DNA from: Botryllus schlosseri | Lineage: Eukaryota | NCBI GenBank assembly: GCA_051294905.1 | Contig: CM119375.1 | Location: 26,660,001 to 26,724,000, forward strand | Reading direction: 5' to 3' | DNA: 64,000 bases | Shown: in pieces, positions 7,098-63,418 of the stretch | Layout of the letters: each line of letters opens with the position of its first letter | Numbering within the stretch: position 1 is the stretch's first letter | Notes under the pieces: model-generated | Told to the model about the DNA's origin: nothing | What the model saw: the letters and a program-made list of their open reading frames with translations, nothing else | The model's database searches: none | Translations under genes and position numbers: made by a program

Positions 7098-7323
7098 ATG
7101 GCTCAAAGCCCCCATTCACTCGGTCATGTTCCAGCGTCCATCGCTAATTTTAATAAACGGACCGCCTCGCCGTCGATATCGATGGGTTGTCTGCCATCGA
7201 CATCTACAAATGGATCGTACTATCCCCTCCTCCCGCAAACCCCAGCGTCGATCATCTCAACAGCTGCTAATCAAGCCGCGGCACTGGGACTGCCGATGTA
7301 TGGAACTCCTGGGCTCATGCCGG
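7098..7323 (+). CDS. RAR: Distal first coding exon, probable RAR isoform 1 A region
   Basis: ATG at 7098 with in-frame TAG at 7053. Acceptor ttgtttaacag| at 7032 leaves a 65-nt UTR segment. Encodes MAQSPHSLGHVPASIANFNKRTASPS...GLPMYGTPGLMP. Donor CGG|gtaagt is phase 1. Assignment to RAR is inferred from phase compatibility and from finding no terminal exon before the RAR exon. Confidence 0.7.
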
Positions 7324-29000: not shown

Positions 29001-29857
29001 TAACCGTCCTAACTTTTGATTGTCGAATTTTTAGAATTTGTTTGCAGTAGACACCTACGGTACGGTATTTTAAAATTACCAGTATAAATGATAAATGCAC
29101 AAACCAGTTAGAGATGTGCCTGTAAAAGACAGATAAGTCCATGTCAACGGCTATGACACTTTTCGTTTAAGCGTAATGAGAACACACGAGGAAAATAAAA
29201 AGAATATCGGCCTGGTGTAAATGACCATAGTAGTCGACAAACACCATGAATACCACAAACCAACCAACACACGAGTTGCACATTTACCGAAAAACTATCA
29301 AGTTTGTACCTCCAAAGTTCAAGCCAGCTGTTGTAAGCAATGGTCATTTTCGGATCCATCGGTTTCAAAGCATTGTCGAAACCTTATTGGCTTCTTGACC
29401 ACTGTTATCGGTAGATTTATCAGAAGTTACCAAAGTGGCCAATACATCCACATGCATTTATGTACGAAACAAATGCGCTGCATGGTACACGCGTAATGCG
29501 CTATACCGTGACAACGGAATTGGGCCTTCACGAAGTCCCGTTTCCGGCCGATCATACTCAATGAAATATATGACGACACAGCGGAGGAGAGTATTCCGTC
29601 CGTCCTGTACAGCGTAACAAAGCAACGGATACATTCTCATTGCAAGAACAAATTCGATGGTTCACAGTGAACTGTTACACTGTCGTTTTATTAGAAATTC
29701 GTGTTCCATTTTAAATTTCTATTATTTGGTTCTGTAATGACGCGCGCCCGTCGTAGTGATGAACTTTGCCGGTTCACTGGATATGGGATAAAGATATACG
29801 CGCGTCACAAAACCAGTGCTTCCTCTTTCCTAATATTGAGAGACGAAATTTACTGTG

Positions 29858-38310: not shown

Positions 38311-40455
38311 ATTGTAAATAGTGAGATATCGGTGATTTTTCCGTGTGTTTTACCCGTTATGATGTCAAAATATGTGACTTTACGATGCAGACCTACATTT
38401 ACATTTTCATCGGTTGCAAACGAGGTTGAGTGCCGCACTGGGAACCCTTCAGTAGCATTACACGATAGTCGGTACCAGCGACGTTTGAAATTAGATATCT
38501 CAAAATCGAGTCCTTGTCTTCATGTCAGTTCGCGTGGCACGCTTGCCGGGACTCATCACTGGAGCGATTCGTTTCGATGAGGCAAAAAGAGGCGGAAATA
38601 ATTGCGTTCGCTACACGCCTATTTCTTCACTTGAACTATTTCGTCAATGTATTCAATGCCGGCGCTGTGTCGGCATTCGGGTGTGACCGTACTGCGTTGT
38701 ATCACCGGTACTGCCAACACCACAACGTTTGTGATTGGGTTTTGCAATGCGTCACGATTCTGCATTGGAATCATCGCACGCCTGTTCGGTGGATGACGAA
38801 TAGTGATTTGCAGGCACGTTACGCAACGCAGACCGTGTTAGTCGAATGGTTACATCACAGACAAAAGAAATGAGGATTTTGTTGCTTTGTTACTACGTAG
38901 CGTTGCTATGATTTTACATCGAACAAGTTTAATAGTATTCAGGCTGGTACAAATTACAAATCTCGTTAGTTGGCGGTCAATGGATTACTTTTTGGAGTAG
39001 TTTTAGTTCTAGTTCCGTATTTCGTTGTCGAATAATTATCAAACACGTGTCGCGTGATTCGCTAACTAAGAGTCATCACTACTAAAAGTGGCGTAGCCAG
39101 GGGTGGGTTTTGGTGGTCGAACCCCCTCCCATTTCAAACTTGATCCGATTCCGATGAAATAAAACTGATGAGTTGCTTCCGAATGCAATCTAATTAGTTG
39201 TGTTTAGTTAGTTAGTTAGTTAGCTGCAGATTTTTAAATCTGGGTAGCTCTAGTCATGAGCTTTGAGAAGCGAGTAGTTCTAGTTCTACTTGCGCATCGT
39301 GAAAATTCAGTAGTTTGTAAAATTCTGATAGTATTCATTGCGTTGAACACTGCAAATGCTTCTCTACTGATGAGATTTCCCATCCAAGTATATCCTGACG
39401 CAGAAGCATGCAACGTTCGGGCTGACCACATTGTTCGCTTATGTTCCGCAAATTTTAATATTAATATTATGAATTTCGCCTTTCTGAATGTCATAGGTTT
39501 CAAACGCCTAGTATTGTAGTGAACACTAAATTCATCGGCAGAAAAGTGCTGTAACTCTATCCAGATACCCAATCTTCTATTGGGTCGCGACTATTATGGA
39601 CTGTCTTATGACCTAATAAAAGACAAAAGGTGTTTATTCTCCGTAAAACAAAAACACGGCACACTACAAGACTAGTCGATATTCGGCGGGAATTGCGATA
39701 TAGTAGCAGATTAACGGCGTGGAACGGTGCGGTAGAACTGTGACAGTTCGTCCAAGGTTACAACTTAATGTTCGGCGTGAGCGTTAGCTGCGAAAATTCG
39801 GTGGCGATTATGACAAGCGGTGAAAGATTATCGCCCTCTGCAATGTCGAAACATGCGTACGTCTAATTATTATCACCTGAATATGACAGACAGTGTTAAT
39901 TACTGCGTGTTCAGTACTTTGTAACGCGGCTTTTATGTAGCATGATAGGTTACAGGATTTGATGCATACACGCAGTGTAGCAATCCGGATTTTTCACTTT
40001 ATTTATTTCCGTATCAGAACATGAATCACAATTGAGTATAATATCTAATTATTTGAGTGTGTTAGTGAGATATGATTCTTTAAAACTATTATCAGATTTC
40101 CAGATTGCGTTGATTTATCAACGAGAACTATAGTTTCGATACTGTTTTATAATGAGGAAGACAGTAAACCTCGATTAGTCCTATCGCAGCATATAAAATA
40201 TGTAGCAGGAAGCTATGTACGTTAGTGAGAATGACATATCCGTCAAGCCGTGATCGACCCACAGCACAAAGTGCAATGAAATAGGTACGGTCGGAAAAAT
40301 ACAGGTCGCATGAATAATTTCAAATTATACACGCTGTAATAATATGATATATTCTAGAATTTTCGTCGGATATCTTCATATTGCTGACTGTTGCTGTTCT
40401 TACATATCAAGATATTCTTAAATAATACTTGGTGGGCGAATGTCATACAGCTGCC

Positions 40456-41179
40456 ATGTCGAATTGCTTGGATCCGAACATGATAGATCTGATATCGTTG
40501 GAAATCGGCGGACGTGGCAATCCGTTGAGAATGCCTCAACCTTCAAACGGCCATGTCCCAGTCAATAAACACAACGTCGACCATTTCAATCGGCAGGATG
40601 TCGGATATCCCATGCAGCAATCACACCGCGGGATTGTTCCAGAATTGAGCCAGTATTCTGCTGATATTACCAGCCAGCCTATGAATGTAACATACTCCCA
40701 TTCCAACGCTATGAATGTCTCGACGCCTTTCACATCACCGCAAGTCAAGACTGAATTTACACAGTCTTATCAGTATCAAGGATATCCCATGGATTCGGCG
40801 CCTTCTTACTCAAACATGAATGTATTTCCAACTGACAGACCTAGCTATTCCCCCAACCAACAACTGACCCCAGAAATGCCGCAGCCTTCCCCTCAAATTC
40901 CTAATCGTTCCCCTCCTGGTTTTGATTTCGCAAAGTTCGCTATGATGCCTTCGAAAGCCATCGATAACATCTACGCGGACTTGTACCCGAGCTATAAACC
41001 CAGGCCCGCCCCGACCCCCGGCCGTAATTTCGTGATCCCCAGTCCTGTGGGGTACGGGAAGGGTCCGAATCAGTATAATTATCAAATGGAACAGTTTCAA
41101 GACCGCGAGAGACAAGACGGATATTACGAACGCAGGGAGCCAATGGCCTACCACGCTGGAATGCATATGCGCAATGGAG
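40456..41179 (+). CDS. RAR: Large P/S/Q-rich exon, probable RAR alternative A-region exon (isoform 2, first coding exon)
   Basis: Long GC-richer ORF (MSNCLDPNMIDLISLEIG...YHAGMHMRNG) with in-frame TAA at 40423 upstream. Sequence turns T-rich after GAG|gttctg at 41179/41180, a weak phase-1 donor that is in frame with 42814 and 61828. The 3' boundary is less certain. Confidence 0.7.
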
Positions 41180-41989
41180 GTTCTGTATTATTGCATCGGT
41201 TTTTCGAGCTCCACTCTTTCTTGCCTCACGTTGTGTACTGTAGCACTTAACTTGAGTCAAATACACTGATTCTTATGGAGGTTGAATAGTATATCTTAAG
41301 CGACTGGCAGACTTTAGATATACAATGTTATTTTCAATTCTCTACCAGTTACCGACGATTACCCGTGACAAGTATTCATTTAGATACTATTCATTTGTAT
41401 ACTGAAGTTATGTACCCCAAAGAATCTCGTCTTATGGAGATATATCACAGTGGTATAGGGGGTGCTGTTTTCGTTTGTCACCCTAAATAATTCCCAAAAA
41501 GGTGGTACACGAAATAGAGTCCAGTTCACCGAATTGAGGTGTTTGACTCGATTTCCCCGTTTGGAAGGGGTGTGACGTATTTTCCTCCCATGGATTCAGA
41601 GTGGGGTATGGATCTTCTTAGGGCGTGTCAGTATGTCTTCCATAGTCTGAGCTGTGCGTGCAATGTATTTAAGCCTAATCCTTACTGGAAGTTTCTAGAT
41701 GACTTCAGTGCAACTTAGGATCGCGTATCTTAGTATTCTTCGATAATTGATAAAATTGCTGTAAAGGAGAAATGATTACGAATCACTTTATTAAATTGCG
41801 ATTGTCTTTTCCGTTGAACGATAAAATAATGAAATTTAGGGTGACGCATATTATGTGGATTCACCACTAAATATATTAGCATACTTCGAGATTTAAGAGA
41901 TTTGGAAAGAACATTGTATATTTGTATATGATTTGTCGATTGCTGATATACAATGTTCTATACAATTCTCTACAAGTGGCTGACGAATT

Positions 41990-42488: not shown

Positions 42489-42813
42489 CAGTGACGATTA
42501 CCCCTGACAAGTGTCAGCCGAACATATTCGGATTTATTTCTGTATAAATATATTATTAAATTGTATACTTGAAGATTCTCAGCGTGTAAAACACGGCGCT
42601 GGGATGTGTGCGCGGTCCCGCGGCGAGCCAAATTAGATTTCATCAAATTAAACGCGCAATTCCGTGACTCGCGCGCGACTAATCGAATGCCGCGATTGCT
42701 CAAAGCTTTCGTAACGAACACGGTCCGTGTTGGTGCGTCTTCTGCTGCGATTTGCGCCGAAATTAAGGGCACTCGACGTCATCCGCTAACCCCGTTTCGC
42801 TTGTGTTTTGTAG

Positions 42814-42930
42814 GCGAACATTCGCACCTTGCCAAGCAGAACGGGGACTCTAACAACAATAGAGTGATTCAGCAGGCCGGGATGGAACAAAACGTGAACG
42901 GACGGAGGAGCAGTAGCGAGAAATGTAGAG
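42814..42930 (+). CDS. RAR: 117-nt symmetric phase-1 exon, probable RAR A-region exon of isoform 2
   Basis: Branch point GCTAAC at 42785-42790, tract cccgtttcgcttgtgttttgtag|, donor GAG|gtaaga. Open in phase 1-1: (G)EHSHLAKQNGDSNNNRVIQQAGMEQNVNGRRSSSEKCR. Confidence 0.8.
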
Positions 42931-48031: not shown

Positions 48032-49301
48032 GTCTAATTCATATTGAAATTAACCCGAATATATTCGGCAGACATTTGCCAGGGGTAATCCTCAACAATT
48101 AACAGAGAATTGAAGAAACATTGTGTATCATCATTCTATTCATTTCAATGTGATTGTATAATGTATTATTCAATGTTATGCTGATTTTCTGTATCTCTTC
48201 TCTTCAAATACCTGTATTGATACACGCGGTTAGGATGAAAAATATGTATCCCGCGTGGTCGTGCCGTATGTCAGGCAGTGACTGTCTAAAACCTGGTAAA
48301 GCATCGATATTGTTAGTTATAATTTTATAATCCGGCTGGTATCTGGGCAAGGCGCGATTATACCACTTTCACGCCCAAACCGCAACGTATTCCGGCATTG
48401 TGTCGTCACGCGAGTGCCGCATTGTTTGGTTCTCATTCCGAATCAACTTTGAGACAGTTCACCTGCAATTAAAAAGTTGAAATTATGAGCGATGATACAT
48501 TGTTTTACGCTTCCCGTGTCAAGTTACTTGGGTTCGCAGTGAGGACAAACGCAACCCTCGGGCGATTGCCACAAAACCTGCAGGAATCTGTAAGGTTAGC
48601 CCTGTGTGTGTGGAAAATCGCTAGCCTTTTCACCTTCATATAATAATATGCTCATTCACATTCCTAATAAAGGCGATATTGTGTCCCGGGAAAGTTCCGT
48701 ATAAGCGAATTCAATGCTATTGGGATGATGTTCATAATTCTATTTTTACAATTTTGCGATGTGTTTAATAACGTGTCAGTGCGGTCCTGTTGAACGTAGA
48801 TATTTAAATTCGTCAAACTGCGAATGGTTTGTCCCTCATCGATATCAGAGGCTTGTTATAAGCGTATGCAAATATCCGTTCTTGGAATATCACGCCATGC
48901 CCTTCCAGATGGCATCTGAGTTCTCGATTTCAACAATTTTGGTGGTATGGAATTTTCTTAACGTAGGAATTACTTCGTGGAATATGCGTAGCATGTCTTG
49001 TTCAATAGGAAAATCTTGTAATGTGCCAGAGCTGGTCGAAGTAGTTTTCGTCTTTACTCAAACCGAAGTAGAAGTAACTGCAAGACGTAATAATGTCAGC
49101 ATGTTATTCGCGTTTCATGCGACTCAAATTGGGCGTGAACAACTGAACAACATCAGTTGCAGCAAACGCGCCATATCGCGTAATAGTCCCGCGGCTAGAT
49201 CTTGCTTTGGAAACCGCAGTCCTGCTATGGCGCACCGAGCATAATCTCTCGTTTCTCTCTCGCCGTATATCTCTCGTTTCGGGATCATACAAAGGACACG
49301 G

Positions 49302-49318
49302 GGTTCACGTGAGGGTCA
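49302..49318 (+). promoter_or_regulatory. Perfect DR5 retinoic acid response element
   Basis: GGTTCA cgtga GGGTCA matches RGKTCA-N5-RGKTCA. It sits in CpG-rich sequence outside any repeat I could recognise, about 12 kb upstream of the proximal first exon. Confidence 0.7.
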
Positions 49319-52300
49319 CGCCGTCACGCTACGCCAAGCGCGATTGATGTCTGTTGTTTTGAGAGCGAGCTTGGATTTGTTTGACTTGGTCTTATCCAAA
49401 TACGCGTTTAATGATGTCCCAAACAGTGTGCAAACACGTAACGAGATAGCGACTGCCCGGCTCCGCTCAGCTGGTCATATATACATATGATATGCAGCGA
49501 ACCAACTGTGTAGCACTGCGCCAAGTTTTGACATCTAACTAATTAGGATCTTTTTGGACTTGAACCTTGCGTTTCAACAGAGGTTATTTAATCACGCATT
49601 TAGGGCTGTTCAAACTTCCTCGCTAGTTTTAACTGGTCCGTGTACGCAGCCCTTCGCAGACGCTGACAAGTACATAAATTCTGGGTAATTAGACTAATTA
49701 TAGCGAAATGCTGGTAGTCTGATTCGAGTCTAATATATAAGATGTTTATATGCTACCATAATTATGGATCTAATTCCTGATTTTCCTGAAAATTCTGCAG
49801 AAGTGTATAAATGCAAAACGAGCCAAGCTTGCCATATACAACCATTTGCCATTCTCGTGCGTATGAGCATCAACTCGTATTTGATATGAATTTCATTTAG
49901 TTTGTGTTGTGTTTCTTCCTAATCCTGAATTTCAGTCAATTTTGTGTTTTTGCGAGTTCTGCAAATCTATACTCTCCAACTCTGTTAAGTAAGTGTCTCT
50001 GTGTGAAAGTTTGGAATGTAAGTGATTAGGATCGCGTTGGACTTGTAGCGTGCGTTCCGACAAAGGTTGGTAAATCTAGCGTTTAGGGCTGTAGGCCTAC
50101 TGCTGATTTTTCATCCAAGGCAGTGCTTATCTCGTCCTAATCTTATGAGATGGCCGCTATTTCCAATTTTCCCAGCGACTCGAAAACAGTGACGTACCCA
50201 ATTGCTCGGTGATTGCTAATAGAAGATTATCACAAGTGTGTTGCATTGCGTTTAACGACTTTGTCGGATATTCGATCGTTATAATTATTGCGCGCATGAT
50301 ATGTCGCGCTGTACGTTGGAGGTTGGTAACGCCCCGAGCACTCGAGCGCCGTGCGAACGCTCTGGGAAGTTTTGCTTGTATCCTAGATACGAAATTGGTA
50401 ACATAGCAGCACTCCACCAGGCTTTCTGGAGTGCGAGGCAATTTTATTACAACTGCGTATCTTACGCCCATCACACTTTTAGTTTTAGGAATCTGTGTAC
50501 TTATTACAAAATCCATCGACTTTGCTAACCACATACAGTTCTGCAGTGCGTGGTGCAAAGATGCATTTGTAAACTCGTCCGCTAGACAGCAATTGCATAC
50601 TACTGCGCGAGACTTGACTTTTGGAATTCTGTTTCTCATTAACATCGTGTGAGTAAATCCTGGGCATGAGAAAATTGTAGACATAACATGGGATAGGCGA
50701 TGCATTTTATCAAAACGTCAACCACTGGCCCTTAGGTTGAGATGTAAACTTCTGCAAGTTTCGTTTCGCTTCCTGTCTAGTTCCAATTTAGCGCTGAACG
50801 CAGTTAAGTACTCACTCCAGTAATCCGATTCGGCAAATCATTTGTTGATCGTGGCAACGCGTATAACGGAAATTTTATTGCCCCGCAAATTATTTTAATT
50901 GTCGGCTGATGCATCGTTCTGCTACTGTTAAATGTTTATTTCCCCAATGGCCGATTAAATATCGCGCGCGGTAATCATGCCGATTGCGACATTACTGCAG
51001 CCAACGTTTGTTGTTGGTGGTACCGCGCTCGTTTCCGCGTAGCGCCAAACAATCACAGTTTCCCACAAACTTCAGTTGAAGTTACACGCCGCACAATTAT
51101 ACAATTTATGCGTGTTTATTTCGAGAGTGTACAGTCAGATAAGAACTTATGCGTAAGCTCTTTAAGGTAGTTCAGTTGTTGATGAGATCTTGTACGAGAT
51201 ATGTGACCTGGTCAACTAATTCCACATCGGATTATGAAAGCATGGTCACATGTTATATATGTATGAACCAAAAACCAATCATTTCTGACATGGACAACTA
51301 CATAATTTTAGTTGTCTAGAGCGAAATGCTGGTAATGTAGTTCAGTTGTAATCTAATTTGCGCTATGCTACCATGCTCCCATTTTAATTGTAATCGAATT
51401 TCTCGTTTTCCTGAAAACGCTACTGGAGGACTGTGCAGTGTTCATAAAGCTAATCTTGGTGTACAGACATTTGCCATTCCCATGCTTGCGAGAATGAACC
51501 GAACCGATATTTGATATGTTAAGAACTTGATTTTGTTGTTTTATCTTCCAAGTTTTTGCGTTCGGTAATTCTAATCGAATTTCGAAAACCGGAAAATATT
51601 TAGTCCAACTTCGATACTAAGATAGGAACCAATTCCCGTGCTCCCGCGCTAGTTCAGTTGTTGATATGATCTTGTATCAGATATGAGCACAGGAAAACTA
51701 ATCCGGTGACGAAATAGGAAAGAATTCTCACATGTTACATACATTACATGGACCATTCATTTCTTGAAAGTTTTACACTCCGTTGAACTTGACGCTAGGT
51801 GGCCTCAATGTGACAAGGTGCTTGTAACGCAATAAAGGTAGCGCTTTGATGAGGGCGAAAATAACGGTATCTAACCGGTGTTGGTACATGCCGTGTACCA
51901 CTGCGAATCGATGCTTCGGCAATGCTCATATGCCTTGTTTATCGCAGTCCAGATTTTTGTTTAAGATAAGATAACACCGATTCATCACATTCATGATGAT
52001 CGTGTATGTTCGGTATGCATCATACGCCGTTGAAGCCCGATGACATGCTGCACTGTGGCCTTAATCGGGCCCGTAAGTGTCAGTTTTTTTTCTAGAATGA
52101 TCGTGTAGCTTATGTCTTGTGTACAAAGTGCCAATCTTGTTAGATGACGGTCAAGTAACTGCTGTTGTTGGAGTCGTTCTAGTTCCAGTTCAAGCTGCGG
52201 ATGTCTACTATGCATTGCGCACCACTGCACGCGTATATCTAAGGGTATTGTCTCCAGTAGTTGAAATTAGACTGTCGTGAAGGTGTATGAAATCGATTTT

Positions 52301-55300
52301 CCGCTGTACCTTTGTATGAAATCAGGCGTCTTTATTGAGTCGGCGGTAAGGCTCGCGTTTGTTCTCCATCGTTATTGGAGATGAAGCAATTTGCGGAGGC
52401 ATGTGTTATTTCATCTGCGTTATGCGGCCGTCCCCGTAACGACCCTGGTGTAGTGTTTTCAAGAAGCGTCGAGTATTACATCGAGGATTGTTTGCTCAAA
52501 TGGTCTCGAGCGCAATTGGATCGCGTTGTCACTGGGCAAATCAGTGACGTGGTTGTTTTGTCGAGGCAGCGCAGCTGTAGGGTAGGTAGGTACGTTCCGC
52601 CGGCACTTGTTTTGTCCCCGTAAAGAGCTTTATGCACTGAGCCTATAACGCTAAGTTCATCATTGCGATCGCATCGCGCGGTTTACCGTGCGCGTCTATG
52701 CGTAGTAACTTGGGGAAATATGGCGGTTAGACAAAGGCTTTTTTACAACACCATAAGATGCGTTTCTACAAACGATGCGTCATATCGACTCTTGCTATTC
52801 ACGCGATCAATGCGTGCGCTTTGCTGGTTCCAAAATGCTTGTTGTACCTTGCTTATGTAACCATATGTTTGAAATGGTAGCAGAAAAATTTCAAATTTTG
52901 TAAGAATTCCTGAGTTAACAAAATCTGTATTTAATCATAGTTCATTGTGATAATGAGTATGACAAATGTCTGTATACCAAGATCAGCTTGTTGCGCACTG
53001 TGCAGTTATTCTGATGCATTTTCCGAAAAGGCAGGAATTCGATTAGAATTAAAATGAGACCATAGAAACATTGGACGAATTCGATTAGAATTAGATTACC
53101 TGCATTCGTTCTGATCATGCAACTAAAATTGTCTCGTTTCTCAAATCAGCAATGCGTACTTCGTGGGCCAGACACGGTTGCTGCATGTATTTGTACAATG
53201 TACATCATTCAACTCCGTTTCAGGGTTTGAATTCTTTCAACGCTACGTTTTGACACCTCGTTTTGACTTTACCTTAAAGTGCTTGTCATCCTCGTACGCA
53301 GTTGCAAAATGCGCACTCCAAAAGCGTGTTTTAGGCGGCTAATAGGCGAAGCCTCTTTCGACGGAGGCTCATTAGAGGTGTGGAGTCGCGGGTAGAATGT
53401 TGATAGGTTTTCCCCAGAGTGCTGCCGTGTAACGCCTTGTAACGATGGGTTGGACAAGGCGATTTGTAATTAAACGTTGAAAGACGCTGTTTCGACAGCT
53501 GCATCTGGATAGCGTTGGGAAGCCTGAGCGCGGCGACCCTAAGCTTCCATGGCTGCTGCGTGCTCCTACGAATACTTCTTACACCCAGTGATGGCATGGT
53601 TAGTGGTAGTGGTTGGTTCATTTCGCTTTAAGCATGTCGATTTTACGAAGTGAATCCACGCGAGTTACACTTTGAATTCATGATCTATCCACAACATTGT
53701 GGCAAAATGTAATGAAACAGGCATGGTCGAAAAATGTCCAAATTTTCTTTCATTTGATTCATAGCTGGTAATAATTTATTACGTGGCAGCATAAAAAGTG
53801 CATGTTTGAAGATTCCACGCCGTTCCTGATGTTGTGACGACATAACGAGTGATTACCCGAACACTGGACGGGACTCGAAGCCGAATACTCATTCGGAATC
53901 GAATCTCTCAAGTGGTCGATTTTGCTCAGCCGTAATCATTAGCAGTTAATGGCATGTCCCAAATTAGAAGCACAGAGGCAAGTTTGTCGCTGTGGCGTGA
54001 TAATTCGTTATAAATTACGTCATCATAATTGTTTCTACATGTCGAATTGGATTTTACGCACATTGAACTGTTCCTCTCGGGATGAGAAAGCCAGTCGACA
54101 AGGTTGTAGCAGATGAATTTGGATTTATATGAATAGCCTTTAATTATGTTTGTGCCATGATAACGAATTACTGCACCCTTACTAGTTTGTTTGAGGGGCG
54201 ACACCTTGGAAATCTGGAGAATTGCTTTGTGACGCCACACGCGCATCGTTCTCATTTCAAATTGGCTGCATCGGGTTATCAAAAGCCGGTCGAAATAGGT
54301 CGGACGGATTAATTAGCTATGCAAACATGCCGTTGAAGTTCTGGTCCTAGATAATACTTCTTTCCGGTGAATTGAACGCTGTCCGTTGTGATAATTATTC
54401 CGTGCTCGGTTCTCTTTAGGATTGTGCAATGGTAACGCACATGTATCAAAAAATTCAGTGTTTGACAATAGCTTTCGGCAATCCTATCCATTCCTATTAG
54501 TCTAGGCCGGCAGTAAATTGTGGCCAGTGGGCAAATACACTTCTTTTCTGTTGGTCGTCAAACAGTCTTGGATATGTGTGTATTTGAGCGGTAATATCAA
54601 TCTATTGTTAGTCTGGGAGAGTTACAAGAATGGGACATTACATTAATTTGAACTAGTGACATTATTATTCAATTAAGGAACGGGATAATATCCGTGCTGT
54701 ATACGCTGTTTTCCGAAATGTAAGCAAACCTTAGGCAGAATTTAACCGCCGGCCGTTGGACGCCATTTTGGGACCTCCGCGTCGTTTTATCATTCGGCCA
54801 TTACCGAATTTGACCGCTCACTCTTTATAATACTTGAATGTGTTTGTTGTTCCATGTGTTTAAGCTTGTAGCACGCCGAATTGTAACCGAATCCAAATCC
54901 TTTATTCGCCGGTACAGTAGGTATTGGCTCTGATTTCATGATAATTTGCATGAACCTTTTTTGTCAACCAAAATCATCAACTCTAAATCCGGACCCGGTT
55001 TTCCAAAAACCCTGCTGATATATTCAAAGGCGTGTTGCTAACAGTTTAATTCCGTGGAATTAGAGTGAAATGCCGGTGTGGTAATTCTAATCTAATTTGT
55101 GAAATGTAAATATGCTCGAATTTTAACTGTTTTTTCTGAAAAGGCTACTGGAGAACTGCATAGTGCGAAACGAGCCGAACTTGGTGTTCAGACATTTGCC
55201 ATTCTCGTGCTTATGAGAATATCTCCAATTTGGTATGAACTAAACTTAGTTTTTGATGTATTTGATGCTAATTAGGAATGGAATTCAATTTTCAAGTTTT

Positions 55301-56934
55301 TGCAAATTCAGTAATTCTAAATCGAGGATAATTAGGAATTTTTTTACTTGTCCATATCTGTTTCCTAAAAGCGAAACCAGTTGCCCATCTACGGTAACGG
55401 CGGCTCAGCTTTACGTAATGCGAGGGCGAACACGGCCTGTGATAAAATTAGCGAAATTCTGGACCACGATCCCTGTTTTGTTTTGAGCCTGCGCCTTTTC
55501 GTTCCGACACTCCGCTGCCTACATCAATCGACTCGCAGGGATAATTCGAGTAAATATTTATCCGCCAGCTCAAAGCCTTGCTCGAGGTATTTATTAATAG
55601 ATGTAACTCACTCGGCTATCGTAAAAGTCTGTTTGGACAAAAAGAGCGCCTGTTGAACCTCACTCACTGCGATGATTATTTACTGTCGAGTATCGAACGC
55701 GTGTCGTTACGTTATTTTGGTGAGAGTTTTTCGGCGAGGGTGCCGTTATAGAGGCGAAGTCACGGTCATGTTTGAATATGTGTTCGCAGAATTGTTGGCA
55801 GTTTGATGGTCTTAGCGTATAAGCTTGCTAATGAAACCTTTGAGCCTAGTGCTAAAGGCGGAAATGTTTATAAGTCTAGATATAATAGCGTGTATTCTAG
55901 GCCTAGTGTTACCCACAGAATTTGTGTGCTTAGCATAATGTAGGCCGCATCTGTAGACTGTAGTACAAGGCCTTGGATCGGCCCTGTGTCAACAGCGTGC
56001 GGCTAGAACTATTGAGGGTTGTGGTAATTCCATGGGATAGTGGCGGTTCGTTTCAGCTGCGCGTTGATAAGAATCCATAAGGAGAAATAATGCGAGATGC
56101 TTTTTTTAATTGCGTTTCAAGTATGGTTGCGTCATGTCGGAGAATGGGTGGAGCGTGCTTGATTTGATTCGGTGCTATTTTGAACAGGTCGGTTTATGAA
56201 TCGTGTAGTCGTGGCTTGCTTGCAGAACAGGGAATCGTTGTTCTGTAAGTTGCGGTGTCTTTAGTATCAGATAAATACCGCTTCTGGTTACCGATATCTG
56301 TTTTATCTTCTGGTCAAACTTTTCTGTAAGCGTGATGTTTCACATAGTCTAGGCAGAAAAAGTTGTCATCTGGTGTGCTACTGTCTTGTACCTGTTACAA
56401 GTCACAAGGGTTGACTGGTCTAGCAGAGCTTAGCCGGGTTTACGCACTTGTATTATGCGAATGGAAGGAAGATAAGTTCTGTGTTCTGTTACAACTGATC
56501 CCATCCTGACGTGAAGGTTACTATGTGGTTGATCGCTTGGTATTAGCCTGCTGTTTTTTTTACCTTGGCCGTCTATATCGATTGTCGCTGCGTGTATGTT
56601 CTGCGCGCGTGTTATGTATGTCAAAACGATCTGTTCAAGCTTCAAGGCGCCATAAATCGTTTTCGGTTGTAATCCGCGATATTTTGAATGACGAATGATC
56701 AGAATATGCGTTCCCCCGTCAATAAATACTCGTTTAACGCAATGTCATGGGGCGGTTTCGTCATATATATGCTAGCTAACTTCCGCGTGTGTACTCTACT
56801 CCTGGTTGCGATGTAGTTCAAACATGATGCAGCACAGATCTTGCAATATTGTCTCACGCGTGGGGATCGACTTTCAACCCGCGTGGTAAATATGTTGGCG
56901 CAGCCGTATAGAAGCAGATTGCAACGTTTTTTAA

Positions 56935-56942
56935 TGACGTCA
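56935..56942. promoter_or_regulatory. Palindromic CRE/ATF site next to the DR5
   Basis: TGACGTCA, separated from the DR5 at 56958 by 15 nt. Confidence 0.4.
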
Positions 56943-56957
56943 GTGGTTCTAAACCGG

Positions 56958-56974
56958 GGTTCACACAAAGGTCA
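56958..56974 (+). promoter_or_regulatory. Perfect DR5 retinoic acid response element
   Basis: GGTTCA cacaa AGGTCA, about 4.4 kb upstream of ATG 61367. Confidence 0.75.
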
Positions 56975-58884
56975 CGATACACCATACGCGAAAGTGACAT
57001 CGATTTGCAATCATCTTTTTGTTTTGTGTGAACATCAGTTTATCAGGGTTTTGTTCTTTTAACAGTGTTGGTAATGCACAGTTTATTTTGTGCACCAGTA
57101 TTTTGTAGCAATGTATTACACGTGTGATGTGGTTGGTTTTTGTGCCTCGGCGGAACTTCGGGTTTCACGGAAGGCTTGCACAATAGCGTAAGGGTTCGCC
57201 ATGTTGGTAAAACTTCAAGGCCACTGACCTAAACGTACGATTAATCGTTTGCCATGCGAACCGGAGTAAAGGGTACTTAGCAATAGCATATATACGATAA
57301 TTGACCTTGACGTGCCCGCTTCTCCATAGCATATAATGGGTAATCGTCAGTTAAGTTGCGCTTAACTTTACGCCTGACAGGCGTGCGAGTGCGTACGGAG
57401 TTATAATCGTTCTCCACTGAACAACGTTTTCAAGTGGCAAGGCTTCCATCTGATTCGCCTATTTTGAAGCCGATGGCTAGCTCGATTTTTCGCTTACCTT
57501 CGGCATAATATCGCCGCGCGGCACTTGGAATGAAAGGCTGAGAGCGTGCGTCACGCATTCAATAGCCCTTCAATCGTCAGCGGGCGGCTGTGAAGGAATC
57601 GGAGTGAAATTTCGAACGTTGGTGGCCATATCAACCACGTTCGACTGAGAGCTTTCAGTATGCACCGCATCGTACGATGCTGTCAAACAACTGGATTTTC
57701 CAAATGCGCAACTATAAACTAGAACTAAAACTACTCGCACCTAGAACTATTCACTTCTCAATACTAGAAATTGACTTTTATAAATCCGGCCAATTATTTT
57801 TTTTTTCATTTAAATGCGCAACTTGAACCAGAACTGCTCAAAGAACCAGTTGTTGGATTGGAGGTTTGTAGAAGTCTGAATACTGTGAAATTGATGTTCG
57901 TTAGTATCGCTTGGGAAAGTCAGGATTGATAATACGGATGGTTGAACAATGAGCATAGTAGCTGAACACCCTTATACTGTACTGAATTTTTTTTTTAATA
58001 CCCACATTCGCTTGCGAAGTTGATTGACTTATACCAGCAGATACACAATTGTATACATGTTCATCTCAGATTCGATCGCATTTGGCTAATCAATTACGCG
58101 GTTTTGTCACGCATAATTATGCACACTCGCCGACCAATTGTTCTCTGCGTCTTAAAATAAAGTTCGCAAGAATTGATGGTTTTAGCTAGCACGAATTCCC
58201 ATGACGTAACAAAACAGTTGGATGTGAGTTAGATTGGATTAAAACTGAAGCGATGGTCTTTTGGTTGTATTTACGAGAGTGGCAATTCGTCGCGCGCGAT
58301 CGCTCTCTCGGAACTTTCGCCAGGACGGCAGATCTTAATTTAGTTGGGTAGAGATTCCCAGTGTTCAGGAGCGAGTCATTACTAAGAGTTCTACTCTCTG
58401 AGAATATAGTGTGTTAGGCTGCTAGATAATTGCGTGTCTGGCTGTTTGATATAAAGATCGAGCAGTCTGATTATGCATGTGTTGTGAAAAAAGATGTAAT
58501 TTGTATGCGCTGTGGCAGTCTATTTGAACAGCTTCTCGGAGGTACAGAGCTTCGGTATGCAATTGAAAAATATATTCTTATTAAAAAAAAAACAATATAT
58601 GTTCTATAAAATGTTCTTTTCAATTCTCTACTAGTTCTACGATTACCCCTGACTAGTGTTCGGGTTCGGGTTGATTTCAATATGACTATATTTTCCAATA
58701 ACATACTGCCGATGTACGGTTGAATTGAAAAACTACATGTCGCTATTTAGAAATTGCTTGAAAAGACAAGACGTGGCTGAAATAGTTTGTCGGCCTGCAG
58801 GAAGTATCCAATAAACGCCTCGTTTCCGCCGCGCGGTCTTCCACCCGGGCAACCTTTCCGAGTCAAGTAGCGCAGCTTCGACTC

Positions 58885-58915
58885 GGTTCACCCGATCTGA
58901 ACTCGCTCTTGACCT
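58885..58915. promoter_or_regulatory. Cluster of three perfect nuclear-receptor half-sites
   Basis: GGTTCA (58885) n7 TGAACT (58898) n6 TGACCT (58910), i.e. an IR7 plus a minus-strand DR6. Confidence 0.35.
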
Positions 58916-61366
58916 TTCATTGTTCCGCAAGATAGGCGTTGATAATCCTGTTACGTAGGAAGGCGGTTGTAAGTGAAAGTACCGATAAAGTCTTGCGTTC
59001 GCACTCGGAATCATTGTAAATGTGTCAGGGTGTTAAAGTTTGTGTTGACACCGTGGGATAGTTTTCACTCCGTTCCATTTCAAAAGCGTAATACGACAGT
59101 GTCTGTTGTTGCTCCAGACAGCTAGCTGTCTTTTGCGGTTGCTTTAACTGACCTCGACTTCTCTTAAGCTTCCTGAACGGATGAATTATGCATTTTCAAA
59201 TGAATTGGGAGCGCCGGGCCTTTGTCGGGTCCTTGTTATTTTTCGTTACTTGATTCGATACGCTTTCGCAATGTTTGCGCTGCAGCGTTTCCGTTGCTTT
59301 ATGCGAGATTGTTCACACAGATAGCGCACTTTTCATCAGTTGTAAGGCATTGCCGAGTATACAGCATCGCTCGCGTACAGGCCCGAATCAATTGCCGTTT
59401 CTAAACAGCCCACGGCTAAATGTAGACGGTTTGATAACGACGGATGATATTGCATTCACCCTGTCTTTAGTAGGCTAGTTAGTCTCGTAATAAGCAAGTG
59501 GGACAATGCGATTTACGGCGGTGATAGTCGGCAGGGTTGGATACCTCGAAAATTGCCAGCTTTTGTGAATTCTAACTCAATTAGTGAGAAATGCAACATG
59601 TTCAGTTTATATCAAATCAGAGTTCATAAGCGCGAATCAAACGTCGGTACAGCAAGCTTGGCTCGTTTAGCACGATACAGTTCTGCAGCATTTACGGGAA
59701 ATCTATAAATTGATCAGAATTAAAATGTGAACATAGAAACATTTCAAATGTTGGATTACCCACATTGGCTCTAATCACGCAACTGGAATTATCTCGCTGT
59801 TCCAAGTGTCGGAGTCGGATTTCGCGTGCTGCATGAATGCTTCCATGAGACCTTTTGACATGATTGCGTTCGCTTGCTGCCCACGCTTGACGGGAAATCT
59901 AAATATTGCTTTACTATGTTTTGAAGCGCCAGTGGTCATCGCAAGAGATAACATTGAGAGGCGGCGTATCGGTGGCGATTAGTTCTCGCGATCTATTTCA
60001 AGGCACTTTACTGCCGAAGTGAAGAGCGACCGTTTCCACCCCTGTATTAGTCATAATGGAGGGTTGATTCGGTTGAAAAGTCAGCGTTTTCTGTGACAAT
60101 GTGCCGCCGTACTAGACGTACGGATGGTATGTCGCGGATATCCACAGTCGGCTAGAAAGGAGGTTATGACATTGTACGCGGATTTAGAGTCGGTAATATG
60201 ACGAATGGTGCAACATGTTTCTGCTTGATGTTTCGAAAACTGTGTGATATGAAGAATATGTACAGCTCGTTATGTACGATTTTTTCCTGACTTACACAGA
60301 GTACCAATCTATAAACTATCCATCTATCAACTGAATATTGGTTTTAAATAGTTCTAGTTGCAGATATTGAAAAGTGAGTAGTTTCGGTTCTAGTTTTTAC
60401 AAGTCTGAGGCAGGTATATTATCCTGTTCGCATGTCGCGGTATGCTGTTATGTTTACGACGCCAATGAGGTTTTGGTAGTCGGTCTACTTTCCAAATATC
60501 AATCAGCATTTCGAATTACCGTTAGCGCGAAATTACTAGTGACAACGGACGATGTTCCTTTGACAAGTTCGCAGGCGCCTGGCTGACGCGTCTCTCGGCG
60601 TAATTTGCCGTTCAATTGTCGTGTAGTACTGTAGTCCCGTTTCTCATCAAATTGTTGTTGCTTGTTATTGTTGGTTGGGCTGATCATTGCGTCTGCGGTG
60701 CTGATCGATGACATTTCGCGTAGGCTCGGTTTTAGTCCGGTCACGATAATTCCAAAAACGGCACCGATGCGCTAGTATATCTAGCAGCATGTTTTTTATG
60801 TACATTCCTTCCTATCATTAACGGTATTGTACGTTGGTAAAGGAGCGTTTGTGTGTATCCCCCAATTCGTATTCATTTCTCGATCTGGTTTACTTTCGTC
60901 ACTGGCTTTGTGTAATTGTTTGAAAGCGTTTTAGTAATACACAGCGGACATATACAATACGTTAACGCACCGTAGTTTGCTATCCTGTGAACGCGCTGGG
61001 TTGATTCTAAATATAAGAGTGCGGTTTCCTGCTTTGTTTTCTACTGGGGTTTCGAGAACACAAAGAGAATGAAGGTCGTTTTTGTTGTATTTGAAACCAT
61101 TTGATAATGTGTATATCATTCAAATGATGATGTGATCTATGACCCACTGAAATCAGCGTCATGACCCATGGGTGTATATCTTCAGGTCCAGTGATTTGGG
61201 TATTTCCGACCAAGCATTATTTGATATGCATATAGTTGATGTGTGTTGTGAAATTTGATCCTAGTCTCTCAACAGTTTTCACGTGTCTCCGGCAGGATCA
61301 TATTCTAAAATAGCACAGTAAGCCTGAAAATATCGATAAAGCTTGCGCTCTTGTAAGCGAAGCACG

Positions 61367-61643
61367 ATGAACATGGTTGAGTTCCAAGAGCAATGGCGCA
61401 ACAGAATGAACGGCATTCTCACTGACATCTTCACGACGGGCGGCGGTCTGGTGATGGACTCGCAGCCGCCCGGCATGCACATGAACCATCGCCAAAATAA
61501 CGGACACGCGGGGGTCCACGGGATCGTATACAATCAAAATCACCACGCGGGGTACCCGCACAGCCAGCCACAGATGGCGCCCCAGCAAGTGTCCGGGAAT
61601 AACTACACCAGTCCGTATTATTCGTGGGAATATTCGTCCAGAT
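61367..61643 (+). CDS. RAR: RAR proximal alternative first coding exon (A region, isoform 3)
   Basis: ATG at 61367 with in-frame TAA at 61337. Encodes MNMVEFQEQWRNRMNGILTDIFTTGGGLVMDSQPPGMHMNH...YYSWEYSSR (Q/H/N/P-rich). Donor GAT|gtgcgt is phase 1 and joins in frame to 61828 across a 184-nt intron. Confidence 0.85.
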
Positions 61644-61827
61644 GTGCGTAATGATTTAGTGCGCTGTAGCGACGATAGGTCTCGATTAGGCCTGGGTATC
61701 GTATGCATAACATGGATGCTTCCAATTTTGACCTTCAATGTTATCGCAACGAAAATAACGCCCAACCTTAGTTTCAACTGATTCAGTTTGGTGAACAAGT
61801 GAATGAAAACATTCCTTTTCGTTACAG

Positions 61828-62021
61828 CATCTCCCGACAGCGTGGGACTTTCCTCAGCCAGTAGCAACGCGTCCGGTTCCGAATCAGAAGGGGTGATGCA
61901 CGGCTACCCGCAACAGCCCCCGTCTCCGCCCCCACCCCCGAGAGTTTACAAACCGTGTTTCGTGTGCGGGGACAAGTCGTCCGGGTATCACTACGGCGTC
62001 GCGTCGTGCGAAGGATGCAAG
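61828..62021 (+). CDS. RAR: Retinoic acid receptor (NR1B) common exon: B region plus first zinc finger of the DNA-binding domain
   Basis: Translates to (x)[64 protein letters not shown], a near match to vertebrate [38 protein letters not shown]. Acceptor ttccttttcgttacag|CA (phase 1), donor AAG|gtgaga (phase 0). Both phases match the equivalent vertebrate RAR exon. Confidence 0.97.
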
Positions 62022-63418
62022 GTGAGAGATTTTTTTGTGTTTATTTTCAAAGCCTTTGAGATTGATTTAAAAATTTCAGTATGTATACAATTGAATAATA
62101 TATTATATTAAAATTAACCCGAATATTTTCGGCTGATACGTCAAGGGTAATCGCGACCGTAACTAGTGCGGAATTCAATGGAGATTTGCATCGCTTACTG
62201 TTATGGGAATGAGATATTTGTATCATTCCAGTAGTTAGCACTGCATTGTATATTTTGTAATCGATGCGATGGGTGGCTGTTTCTATTCAACTATTCGCGC
62301 CTCAGCATTCGCTTTCACTTCATCGAATCGCGCATGCTTGGAATAGTTACGTAACTTGTGATTTATGACTCTGGCATGAAGATGTAAACTTTATAGGCGT
62401 GTTTTCTCAACCCGTTATTGACTTGGGTCGGCGCTACCAATCTGGTTGTGATCAATCCTGGCTCATTGCTCTTTGTGCCTTTGCGAATGCTCTAGTGCTG
62501 TAAAACAGGGTTGTACAACCTGCGGGCCAAATGAGGCCCGCTAATAGGGCTTTTAATTTAATTTTGTGTGGTAAGTTTGAACTGAGCTCAAGCGGACTAT
62601 AACGCTATAAGAAAAGCCACGAAGACACCAAAACCATCCATGTATGCTTGTTTTATGTGGAACGGGTTGCTGTTGTTGCCCGGGCGCGATATTTACTGTC
62701 ACGATCTGTTTCCTATCGTCACGGCCCTGCAACTGCGCCACGGTTTCCTGGCTGTTAGCATCCATCATTCACGCCGCACCACTCTCGCTAATGAGTAAGG
62801 AATGCGACTCGCGAGCTGACTGCTTCTGTTAGCGCTCATCTGGCTTCTCTCCCCCGGCTGAACAGCGGCTCTGGCTTTGTGGAATACGTGGCCGACTTCA
62901 GATGGCTTAGTCACGTTGTTTTGATAGATATGCTTTACAGCTCTGTTATCGACGATCGTTGTTATGAGTTGGTCATAGTTTCATGTTGGTTACGCCCGAA
63001 ATTTTTACCAGGCCGGCGTGTGTTATATTTCTGGTCTAGTTCAAATAGATTAAATTTGTCTCGCCCGTAGTGACGGAGTGATTGTTGAAATGCTTTTTCG
63101 TCGCTGGGTTTGGAAGGTGTCGGGTGCGTATGGTATCTTCTGCGGATTGCTAGTACCCTAGAGAATTTCCAGGCTGACCTCGCATGCACTGCGTGCTTGC
63201 GCGCGGCTTACGTCTGAACTGCGTTTGATACTTCCATGGGATACTGTGAGCGATATTGGATAGTGACCCGATGTTTTATTAAGAATTGGCAGTTGCAATT
63301 GACGGCAGCATCGCGGGTAGGGCTCGATGATTAATAAGAGTTATATTATCAACGAGAAATATCGTTTCCATGCTTTTTGTCCAGCGTGAAATCCTTGAAA
63401 CCTCAATTAATGGTATCA

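What the first reader, a model, noticed from the sequence alone, without database searches (positions are those of the whole stretch)
49300..56976. Twin perfect DR5 RAREs upstream of the proximal RAR first exon: candidate RA autoregulatory loop
Seen: GGGGTTCACGTGAGGGTCACG (49300-49320) and GGGGTTCACACAAAGGTCACG (56956-56976) are both perfect DR5s. They match at 17 of 21 positions, including bases outside the half-sites, yet share no wider flanking homology, so they do not look like copies of one transposon. They were the only perfect DR5s in my manual scan. Rough estimate: at about 40% GC, roughly 0.1 such sites are expected by chance in 64 kb on both strands. Established: vertebrate RARa2 and RARb2 are RA-induced through DR5 elements upstream of a proximal first exon. 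Inference: the isoform starting at 61367 is RA-inducible, which would suggest an ancestral chordate or convergent feedback architecture.
Basis: partly seen in the sequence, partly recalled or inferred. Interest (0 to 1): 0.8.

Follow-up and report, generated by a model that had tools for sequence, protein, structure and literature searches.

The report
Conserved retinoic-acid response elements inside RAR
Two perfect retinoic-acid-receptor binding motifs sit inside a sea squirt's own retinoic acid receptor gene; one belongs to a four-half-site module kept at the same place in four sea-squirt species, and similar motifs crowd the amphioxus gene, so the receptor probably regulates itself as in vertebrates.

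Summary
The window holds exactly two perfect DR5 repeats (RGKTCA-N5-RGKTCA), at 49302-49318 and 56958-56974. Both are on the sense strand; 0.09 are expected by chance.

The gene is an RAR of a styelid ascidian. Both sites lie in the intron between the long-isoform N-terminal exons (about 40.4-42.9 kb) and the short-isoform A exon (61367-61643).

The same sense-strand module sits at the same gene position in Styela clava, Ciona intestinalis and Clavelina lepadiformis. In a 64 kb by 88 kb comparison with Styela, it is the only non-coding block that survives.

Site 2 has a positional analogue in Styela but no conserved flanks.

The amphioxus RAR locus carries eight perfect DR5s against 0.13 expected.

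My reading is a selected RAR/RXR response element giving RA feedback on RAR, with the same layout as the vertebrate internal (P2) RAR promoters. RAR/RXR binding, RA-inducibility and the target promoter are untested. A published title states that RA does not upregulate RAR in Ciona. I rate it a new member of a known kind, of moderate to high evo-devo interest.

The parts
49282..49318 (+). Four-half-site module, i.e. two DR5s in tandem: GGATCA-tacaa-AGGACA-cgg-GGTTCA-cgtga-GGGTCA. The 3' DR5 is perfect; each half-site of the 5' DR5 has one mismatch.
   Evidence: Sequence. Aligns with four-half-site modules in Styela (L004 53371-53409), Ciona (L002 19126-19164) and Clavelina (L003 4152-4198).
49302..49318 (+). 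Perfect DR5, site 1 of the finding.
49319..49330 (+). Conserved 3' flank of the module, CGCCGTCACGCT (CGTCGTCACGCT in Styela).
   Evidence: Part of the blastn block 49285-49330 ~ L004 53374-53421 (81% over 48 nt). This is the only non-coding hit at E<=1e-3 in the whole-locus comparison.
49397..49419 (+). Second conserved non-coding block, colinear with the module. It contains TAATGATGTC.
   Evidence: blastn 49397-49419 ~ L004 53501-53523, 91% over 23 nt. Motif search.
56958..56974 (+). Perfect DR5, site 2 of the finding: GGTTCA-cacaa-AGGTCA, 4.4 kb upstream of the short-isoform ATG.
   Evidence: Styela has a positional analogue 3.0 kb upstream of its short A exon (L004 68123), but only the DR5 itself matches (14/17) and the flanks do not.
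56935..56942 (.). Perfect palindromic CRE-type site TGACGTCA, with 15 nt between it and DR5 site 2. It lies inside TAATGACGTC.
   Evidence: Sequence. TAATGAYGTC occurs only twice in the window, each time within 100 bp of a DR5.
61367..61643 (+). Short-isoform A-domain coding exon (MNMVEFQEQWRNRMNGIL...), phase 1 donor.
   Evidence: Matches the N-terminus of Polyandrocarpa RAR P0001. The A domain is conserved in six ascidians. The splice junction itself was not seen in the RNA data.
61828..62021 (+). Common exon encoding the B region and the first zinc finger ([35 protein letters not shown]).
   Evidence: Pfam zf-C4. The top five PDB sequence hits are all RARs. Donor confirmed by RNA contigs of two studies that run on into GFFRRSVQK.
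40456..41103 (+). Long-isoform A-domain exon. The ORF spans 40429-41250; the exact exon ends were not determined.
   Evidence: tblastn to Styela clava isoform X2, P0002 residues 1-219. ORF listed.
42807..42929 (+). Small exon of the long isoforms (…NGRRSSSEK…) that joins to the B/zinc-finger exon.
   Evidence: tblastn to P0002 residues 235-275 and P0280 residues 249-294.
7188..7322 (+). Far-upstream exon of a third N-terminal variant (Styela isoform X1 type).
   Evidence: tblastn to P0280 residues 77-120, 55% identity.

Best explanation
The window carries the 5' half of the single RAR gene of a styelid ascidian. The gene has alternative N-terminal exons. In the intron that separates the long-isoform exons from the short-isoform A exon lies a tandem-DR5 module of four RGKTCA-type half-sites (49282-49318), under purifying selection. 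A second, isolated perfect DR5 (56958-56974) lies next to a CRE-type site.

Most likely these are retinoic acid response elements. RAR/RXR heterodimers, up to two on the module, would bind them and couple RAR transcription to RA level. The probable target is the downstream short isoform that starts at 61367. That would be a positive autoregulatory loop with the same layout as the vertebrate RARbeta2/alpha2/gamma2 internal (P2) promoters.

Shown here: the motifs, their statistical excess, their gene position, and their conservation across four ascidians. A large DR5 excess in the amphioxus RAR locus is also shown.

Inferred, not shown: that RAR/RXR is the binding factor, that the effect is RA induction, and which promoter is the target.
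For: 1. Motif excess. There are two perfect DR5s against 0.09 expected in the window. The orthologous loci give 3 against 0.14 in Styela, 3 overlapping against 0.02 in Ciona, and 2 against 0.03 in Clavelina, every one on the sense strand.
2. Spacing specificity. Across the five RAR loci that contain any perfect half-site pair, DR5 occurs 18 times, while the nine other DR spacings together occur 12 times.
3. Same topology in all four ascidians: long A exon, then DR5 module, then short A exon, then B/zinc-finger exon.
4. Orthology. In blastn of the whole window against the 88 kb Styela locus, only four blocks pass E<=1e-3. Three are coding exons and the fourth is the site 1 module with its 3' flank. 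A second colinear block lies about 80 bp downstream.
5. Architecture. Styela and Ciona each have four half-sites in exact 11-bp register. The window has the same with a 2-bp shorter middle spacer, and Clavelina has a 13-nt middle spacer.
6. Spacer signature. The spacers (cgtGA, cacAA) fit the N3-R-V signature of the amphioxus DR5s that bind RAR/RXR in vitro (PMC5247814). Ciona's first DR5 has the same ccgaa spacer as the human betaRARE GGTTCAccgaaAGTTCA (PMC8997856).
7. Amphioxus. The RAR locus has eight perfect DR5s against 0.13 expected. Four sense-strand sites lie in the intron before the B/zinc-finger exon and one lies about 110 bp upstream of an A-exon ATG. They are not repeat copies. Amphioxus RAR is used as an RA-responsive positive control (PMC5247814).
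8. Not repeat-derived. Neither window DR5 is in a repeat family.
Against: - No binding, chromatin or expression data were obtainable.
- A published title states that RA acts 'without upregulating the retinoic acid receptor' in Ciona intestinalis (seen cited), although Ciona has the cleanest module. Ciona embryos are described as weakly RA-responsive, with only the Hox1 RARE known (PMC3227721).
- Site 2 has no conserved flanks.
- An unidentified phlebobranch-like contig (L001) has no DR5 in the 4.5 kb available upstream of its short A exon.
- The DR5s lie 4.4 and 12 kb from the short A exon, not next to a TATA box as in RARbeta2. No transcription start was mapped.
- Other nuclear receptors can occupy AGGTCA repeats, for example COUP-TF, or NR4A on AAAGGTCA.
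- Shared spacers may reflect binding preference rather than common descent.
Confidence: 0.62

Rival explanations
1. The module is a selected nuclear-receptor element, but its main role is not RA induction of RAR. It could mediate unliganded RAR/RXR repression or tissue-specific basal expression. Or it could be occupied chiefly by another receptor, such as COUP-TF, NR4A or TR.
For: The cited title says Ciona RAR is not upregulated by RA. Ciona embryos are weakly RA-responsive (PMC3227721). Several 3' half-sites read AAAGGTCA, which from my own knowledge is the NR4A monomer motif.
Against: The 5-nt spacing is strictly kept in all species, while other spacings stay at background. From established knowledge, DR5 is the RAR/RXR-preferred activating geometry. 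Vertebrate and amphioxus RARs are RA-inducible.
Confidence: 0.22
2. The DR5s are chance or neutral occurrences, or are carried by a transposon, and have no function.
For: Site 2 has no conserved flanks. The introns are rich in MITE-like repeats. L001 lacks a DR5 in the sequence available.
Against: No shuffle in any locus reached the observed count. All ascidian sites are on the sense strand. Site 1 is the only non-coding block conserved with Styela. Neither DR5 is in a repeat family.
Confidence: 0.05
3. The elements are RAREs, but they control the whole gene (all promoters) or a neighbouring gene as a distal enhancer, not specifically the 61367 isoform.
For: The distances to the short A exon are 4.4 and 12 kb, and no transcription start was found near either DR5. 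In Styela the module is 17.8 kb from the short A exon but only 4.3 kb downstream of the long-isoform small exon.
Against: Neighbouring genes differ between Ciona, Clavelina and Styela, while the position inside RAR is constant. That ties the element to RAR. The vertebrate precedent is control of the downstream isoform.
Confidence: 0.3

Closest known systems
Vertebrate RARbeta2 internal (P2) promoter RARE (betaRARE, GGTTCAccgaaAGTTCA), and the analogous RARalpha2 and RARgamma2 promoters
   Same: It is a DR5 of RGKTCA half-sites on the sense strand, inside the RAR gene, downstream of the distal-isoform exons and upstream of an alternative A exon. Ciona's first DR5 has the identical ccgaa spacer. 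The human promoter also contains an upstream imperfect DR5, GGGTCAtttgaAGGTTA (the sequence appears in a RARB promoter primer, PMC4131979; its 13-nt distance from the betaRARE is from my memory). That gives a comparable tandem-DR5 layout. A CRE-type site lies near window site 2, and from memory a CRE-related motif lies near the betaRARE.
   Different: [quoted passage not shown] The ascidian elements lie kilobases from the A exon, with no TATA box or transcription start identified. RA induction is proven in vertebrates and untested here.
Amphioxus RAR, an RA-inducible gene
   Same: It is a single-copy invertebrate-chordate RAR with alternative N-terminal exons, and it has a large excess of perfect DR5s inside and upstream of the gene. 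Its spacers tacaa and ccgaa are shared with ascidian sites.
   Different: Amphioxus has many dispersed single DR5s, two of them antisense, rather than one four-half-site module. No flanking sequence homology with the ascidian module could be shown.
Ciona Hox1 epidermal RARE (Kanda et al. 2009, as cited in PMC3227721)
   Same: [quoted passage not shown] It was the only functional one reported by 2011.
   Different: It is in a different gene. I could not read the paper, so its sequence and spacing were not compared.
CYP26A1 R1/R2 DR5 RAREs, conserved across deuterostomes
   Same: They are DR5 elements with A-rich 3' spacers (for example AGTTCAcacaaAGTTCA in zebrafish, the same cacaa spacer as window site 2). 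They mediate feedback in the RA pathway and have been traced by motif conservation across phyla (PMC5247814).
   Different: They give negative feedback through RA degradation and lie in an upstream promoter. Here the element is in the receptor gene itself and is intronic.

Membership tests
DR5-type retinoic acid response element (RAR/RXR site) | Two RGKTCA half-sites as a direct repeat with a 5-nt spacer | tested here: met
   Two perfect matches at 49302-49318 and 56958-56974.
DR5-type retinoic acid response element (RAR/RXR site) | Spacer fits the N3-(A/G)-(A/C/G) signature of in-vitro validated invertebrate-chordate DR5s | tested here: met
   The spacers are cgtGA and cacAA. The signature is quoted from PMC5247814.
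DR5-type retinoic acid response element (RAR/RXR site) | Evolutionary conservation at the orthologous position | tested here: met
   Site 1 module: conserved with its flanks in Styela, and conserved in architecture, strand and position in Ciona and Clavelina. Site 2: positional analogue only, with no flank conservation.
DR5-type retinoic acid response element (RAR/RXR site) | Bound by the RAR/RXR heterodimer | not testable with these tools
   Needs EMSA or ChIP.
DR5-type retinoic acid response element (RAR/RXR site) | Confers RA-dependent transcription that is lost when the half-sites are mutated | not testable with these tools
   Needs reporter assays.
RAR P2-type autoregulatory promoter (RARbeta2/alpha2/gamma2) | Internal position: downstream of the distal-isoform exons and upstream of an alternative A exon that splices to the common B/zinc-finger exon | tested here: met
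   Exon map from tblastn. The same layout holds in Styela, Ciona and Clavelina.
RAR P2-type autoregulatory promoter (RARbeta2/alpha2/gamma2) | RARE within about 100 bp of the transcription start or TATA box | tested here: inconclusive
   The DR5s lie 4.4 and 12 kb upstream of the ATG. The RNA contigs gave no start site or leader-exon junction.
RAR P2-type autoregulatory promoter (RARbeta2/alpha2/gamma2) | The downstream isoform is induced by RA | not testable with these tools
   No RA-treatment data were available. The literature title for Ciona argues against induction in embryos.
Retinoic acid receptor gene (NR1B) | RAR-type B region and first zinc finger | tested here: met
   The top five PDB sequence hits are RARgamma, RARbeta and RARalpha at E 1.5e-18 to 1e-12, and the next family scores 2.7e-08. 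Full-length homologues are RARs of Polyandrocarpa, Styela and Ciona. The ligand-binding domain lies outside the window.

The most novel reading that the evidence does not exclude
A tandem-DR5 autoregulatory RARE inside the RAR gene, placed between the distal and proximal N-terminal exons, was already present in the last common chordate ancestor. It would be homologous to the vertebrate RARbeta2-type P2 RARE. On this reading it was retained through the genome-wide compaction of tunicates, even in Ciona, whose embryos respond only weakly to RA.
Probability: 0.4. Interest if true: 0.7.

Novelty: new member of a known kind. Interest (0 to 1): 0.62.

Why it matters
RAR autoregulation through a DR5 is a textbook feature of vertebrate RARbeta2. 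Tunicates, however, have been described as having a reduced RA response, with a single known RARE (in Hox1) and no RA upregulation of RAR in Ciona.

A four-half-site DR5 module kept at the same spot in the RAR gene across three ascidian orders says that this feedback wiring is under selection in tunicates. The dense DR5 content of the amphioxus RAR locus says it probably predates vertebrates.

The result also gives a short, precisely defined element of 37-39 bp in three of the four ascidians (47 bp in Clavelina). It can be tested directly by electroporation in Ciona, and in colonial styelids, where RAR drives budding and whole-body regeneration (PMC1808485).

Tried and rejected
- Chance: rejected by shuffles in every locus.
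- Transposon or repeat origin: no repeat family covers either DR5. The amphioxus DR5s share no flanks.
- RNA evidence for a transcription start or leader exon: read laying on 56500-62499 gave only patchy, intron-like contig coverage. It showed no joint at the 61367 exon, no laid reads from one raw-read run, and only repeat-derived reads from the other. It did confirm the 62021 donor.
- Exact look-ups for Polyandrocarpa RAR, Styela isoforms X2 and the older X1, and Ciona X2 found no contig. The longest isoforms did work.
- L001, an unidentified Ciona-like contig, has no DR5 but offers only 4.5 kb upstream of its short A exon.
- L005 is a 1.8 kb fragment and useless.
- The B. floridae loci and one of the two B. 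lanceolatum places exceed the size limit, so no DNA was returned.
- A metagenome scan for the module plus its flank found nothing.
- My own Markov simulation timed out. I used the tool's shuffles instead.
- Fujiwara 2005 (Dev Dyn 232:1124), on Ciona RAR promoter activity, is not held. I therefore cannot exclude that it mentions the Ciona element.
- No paper in the held library describes a DR5 in an ascidian RAR gene.


Full report
**Observation**

A pattern search for RGKTCA-N5-RGKTCA on both strands finds exactly these two sites, 49302-49318 and 56958-56974, both on the + strand. The expectation from dinucleotide shuffles is 0.09, and no shuffle reached 2. A scan of every direct, inverted and everted spacing from 0 to 9 finds only four other half-site pairs in 64 kb, one per class. 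The two sites share no wider homology, and neither lies in a repeat family detectable within the window.

**Gene context**

- Positions 61828-62021 encode a nuclear-receptor first zinc finger (Pfam zf-C4). The preceding B region is nearly identical to that of RARs. The five best PDB sequence matches are all RARs (E 1.5e-18 to 1e-12), and the next family scores 2.7e-08.
- RNA contigs from two studies run from 62021 straight into the codons for GFFRRSVQK, which confirms the donor.
- A full-library HMMER search with this exon returned the RARs of Polyandrocarpa misakiensis (91% identity), Styela clava (87%) and Ciona intestinalis (84%). The window is therefore from a styelid ascidian.
- The 503-aa Polyandrocarpa protein begins with the same A domain as the exon at 61367-61643. 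The 688-aa Styela isoform begins with the long ORF at 40429-41250 plus a small exon at 42807-42929. A third Styela N-terminus matches 7188-7322.
- The short A domain (MNxxEFQEQWRNRMNGIL … YYxWDYxxR) is conserved in six ascidians.
- Both DR5s therefore lie in the intron downstream of the long-isoform exons and upstream of the short-isoform A exon, 12 kb and 4.4 kb from its ATG.
Its transcription start is unknown. The RNA contigs covering it also run through its donor, and no joint was reported.

**Conservation**

I fetched the RAR loci of Ciona intestinalis (L002), Clavelina lepadiformis (L003) and Styela clava (L004). Each has an excess of perfect DR5s, every one on the sense strand:

| Species | Observed | Expected |
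|---|---|---|
| Styela | 3 | 0.14 |
| Ciona | 3 (overlapping) | 0.02 |
| Clavelina | 2 | 0.03 |

Exon mapping shows the same order in every species: long A exon, DR5 module, short A exon, B/zinc-finger exon.

Aligning the regions shows that window site 1 is the 3' half of a four-half-site module:

| Species | Module |
|---|---|
| Window | GGATCA-tacaa-AGGACA-cgg-GGTTCA-cgtga-GGGTCA |
| Styela | AGGTCA-aacaa-AGGACA-cacgg-AGTTCA-ttgaa-GGGTCA |
| Ciona | GGTTCA-ccgaa-GGGTCA-cacct-GGTTCA-tggaa-AGGTCA |
| Clavelina | GGTTCA-cctaa-AGTTCA-(13 nt)-AGGTCA-tacaa-AGTTCA |

In Styela and Ciona the four half-sites are in exact 11-bp register.

The strongest single result is a blastn of the whole 64 kb window against the whole 88 kb Styela locus. 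Only four blocks pass E<=1e-3. Three are coding exons, and the fourth is the site 1 module with its 3' flank CGYCGTCACGCT. A second colinear block (49397-49419) follows about 80 bp downstream.

Site 2 behaves differently. Styela has a sense-strand DR5 3.0 kb upstream of its short A exon, but only the 17-mer matches (14/17), with no flank similarity.

One further contig of an unidentified Ciona-like tunicate (L001) shows no DR5, even allowing one mismatch. It offers only 4.5 kb upstream of its short A exon.

**Outgroup**

The Branchiostoma lanceolatum RAR locus (L006) has eight perfect DR5s in 41.7 kb against 0.13 expected.

- Four sense-strand sites lie within 1.7 kb, in the intron just before the B/zinc-finger exon.
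- One lies about 110 bp upstream of an A-exon ATG.
- They share no flanks and fall in no repeat family.
- Some spacers recur between lineages. The spacer ccgaa appears in amphioxus, in Ciona and in the human betaRARE. The spacer tacaa appears in amphioxus, in Clavelina and in the window's degenerate repeat.
- Across the five RAR loci that contain any perfect half-site pair, DR5 occurs 18 times, while all nine other DR spacings together occur 12 times.

**Literature**

- The human betaRARE GGTTCACCGAAAGTTCA lies 3 bp upstream of the RARB TATA box (PMC8997856).
- A RARB promoter primer contains GGGTCATTTGAAGGTTA, an imperfect DR5 just upstream (PMC4131979). Its 13-nt distance from the betaRARE is from my memory.
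- Amphioxus DR5s bind RAR/RXR in vitro with the signature RGKT(C/G)A-N3-R-V-RGK(T/A)CA, and amphioxus RAR serves as an RA-responsive positive control (PMC5247814).
- For Ciona, only the Hox1 epidermal RARE was known by 2011, and the embryos are described as weakly RA-responsive (PMC3227721).
- A 2003 paper is titled as showing RA effects 'without upregulating the retinoic acid receptor' in Ciona (seen cited).
- In colonial styelids RAR is switched on in regenerating buds and is needed for regeneration (PMC1808485).
- From memory only: Hisata et al. 1998 reported RA induction of Polyandrocarpa RAR mRNA.
- I found no paper in the held library that describes a DR5 in an ascidian RAR gene. The most relevant paper, Fujiwara 2005 on Ciona RAR promoter activity, is not held.

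**Interpretation**

The site 1 module is a selected cis-element; I put that at about 0.85. Its strict DR5 geometry, its RARE-type spacers, its location in the RAR gene, and the vertebrate and amphioxus precedents make RAR/RXR the most likely occupant, at about 0.65.

The most likely function is feedback of RA signalling on RAR transcription, probably on the downstream short isoform. Which promoter is controlled, and whether the effect is induction, remain inferences. The Ciona title is real counter-evidence for embryos. The element may act later, at metamorphosis, budding or regeneration. It may also act in a restricted tissue, or through unliganded repression.

Site 2 is a perfect DR5 with a perfect CRE palindrome (56935-56942), with 15 nt between them. 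It may be a lineage-specific addition, or a turned-over copy of the Styela site at 68123. Its function is less certain, at about 0.5.

**Verdict**

Only site 1 is demonstrably conserved. The sites are distal to the A exon rather than promoter-proximal.

In kind, this is a new member of a known class: a DR5 RARE in an RAR gene. Its value is evolutionary. It makes the question of whether RAR autoregulation is ancestral to chordates directly testable with a short defined element of about 40 bp.

Noticed in passing
window 49409-49418 and 56932-56941; L004 53513-53522: The 10-mer TAATGAYGTC occurs only twice in the window, both times on the + strand and within 100 bp of a DR5 (91 nt after site 1, 17 nt before site 2). 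It is conserved next to the Styela module. At site 2 it contains a perfect CRE, TGACGTCA. It may be a partner site (bZIP or homeodomain) of the DR5s. The pattern was found post hoc, so the statistics are weak (10 of 100 shuffles give 2 or more).
   Followed up: partly
window 58885-58915: A cluster of three perfect half-sites, GGTTCA-7-TGAACT-6-TGACCT (an IR7 overlapping an antisense DR6), lies between site 2 and the short A exon, about 200 bp from a MITE-like repeat.
   Followed up: no
window 49306-49311: A canonical E-box, CACGTG, overlaps the first half-site and the spacer of DR5 site 1. It is not conserved in Styela, which has TTCATTGA there.
   Followed up: partly
window 29659-29776: A perfect IR3 (GGTTCAcagTGAACT) and a perfect ER5 (TGAACTttgccGGTTCA) lie about 100 bp apart, far upstream of the RAR long A exon. 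These are further nuclear-receptor-type half-site pairs of unknown meaning.
   Followed up: no
window 58500-58699 and 62100-62299: Copies of short interspersed repeats related in opposite orientation (reads join 58636 to 62136 on opposite strands). RNA-run depth there is 10-30 times higher than in the surrounding intron. Many related MITE-like families are scattered through the window.
   Followed up: partly
window 61086-61696: RNA-run contigs covering the short A exon run straight through its predicted donor at 61643/61644 into the intron, and no 61643-61828 joint was reported. This may be unspliced RNA or contaminating DNA, so the junction rests on homology to the Polyandrocarpa protein only.
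   Followed up: partly
window 7188-7322, 40456-41103, 61367-61643: There are three alternative N-terminal exon sets for one RAR. They match Styela isoform X1, Styela isoform X2, and the Polyandrocarpa/Ciona short form respectively.
   Followed up: partly
L006 9877-9904: Amphioxus RAR has GGTTCA-gtcag-AGTTCA-gcaag-TGAACT, a DR5 overlapping an IR5, about 110 bp upstream of the ATG of one A exon. That is a promoter-proximal arrangement much closer to the vertebrate P2 type than anything seen in the ascidians.
   Followed up: partly
L004 82064-88033 (-): In Styela clava the gene immediately downstream of RAR encodes a short-chain dehydrogenase (Pfam adh_short). Retinol and retinal dehydrogenases belong to this family. 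The neighbour is not shared with Ciona or Clavelina.
   Followed up: no
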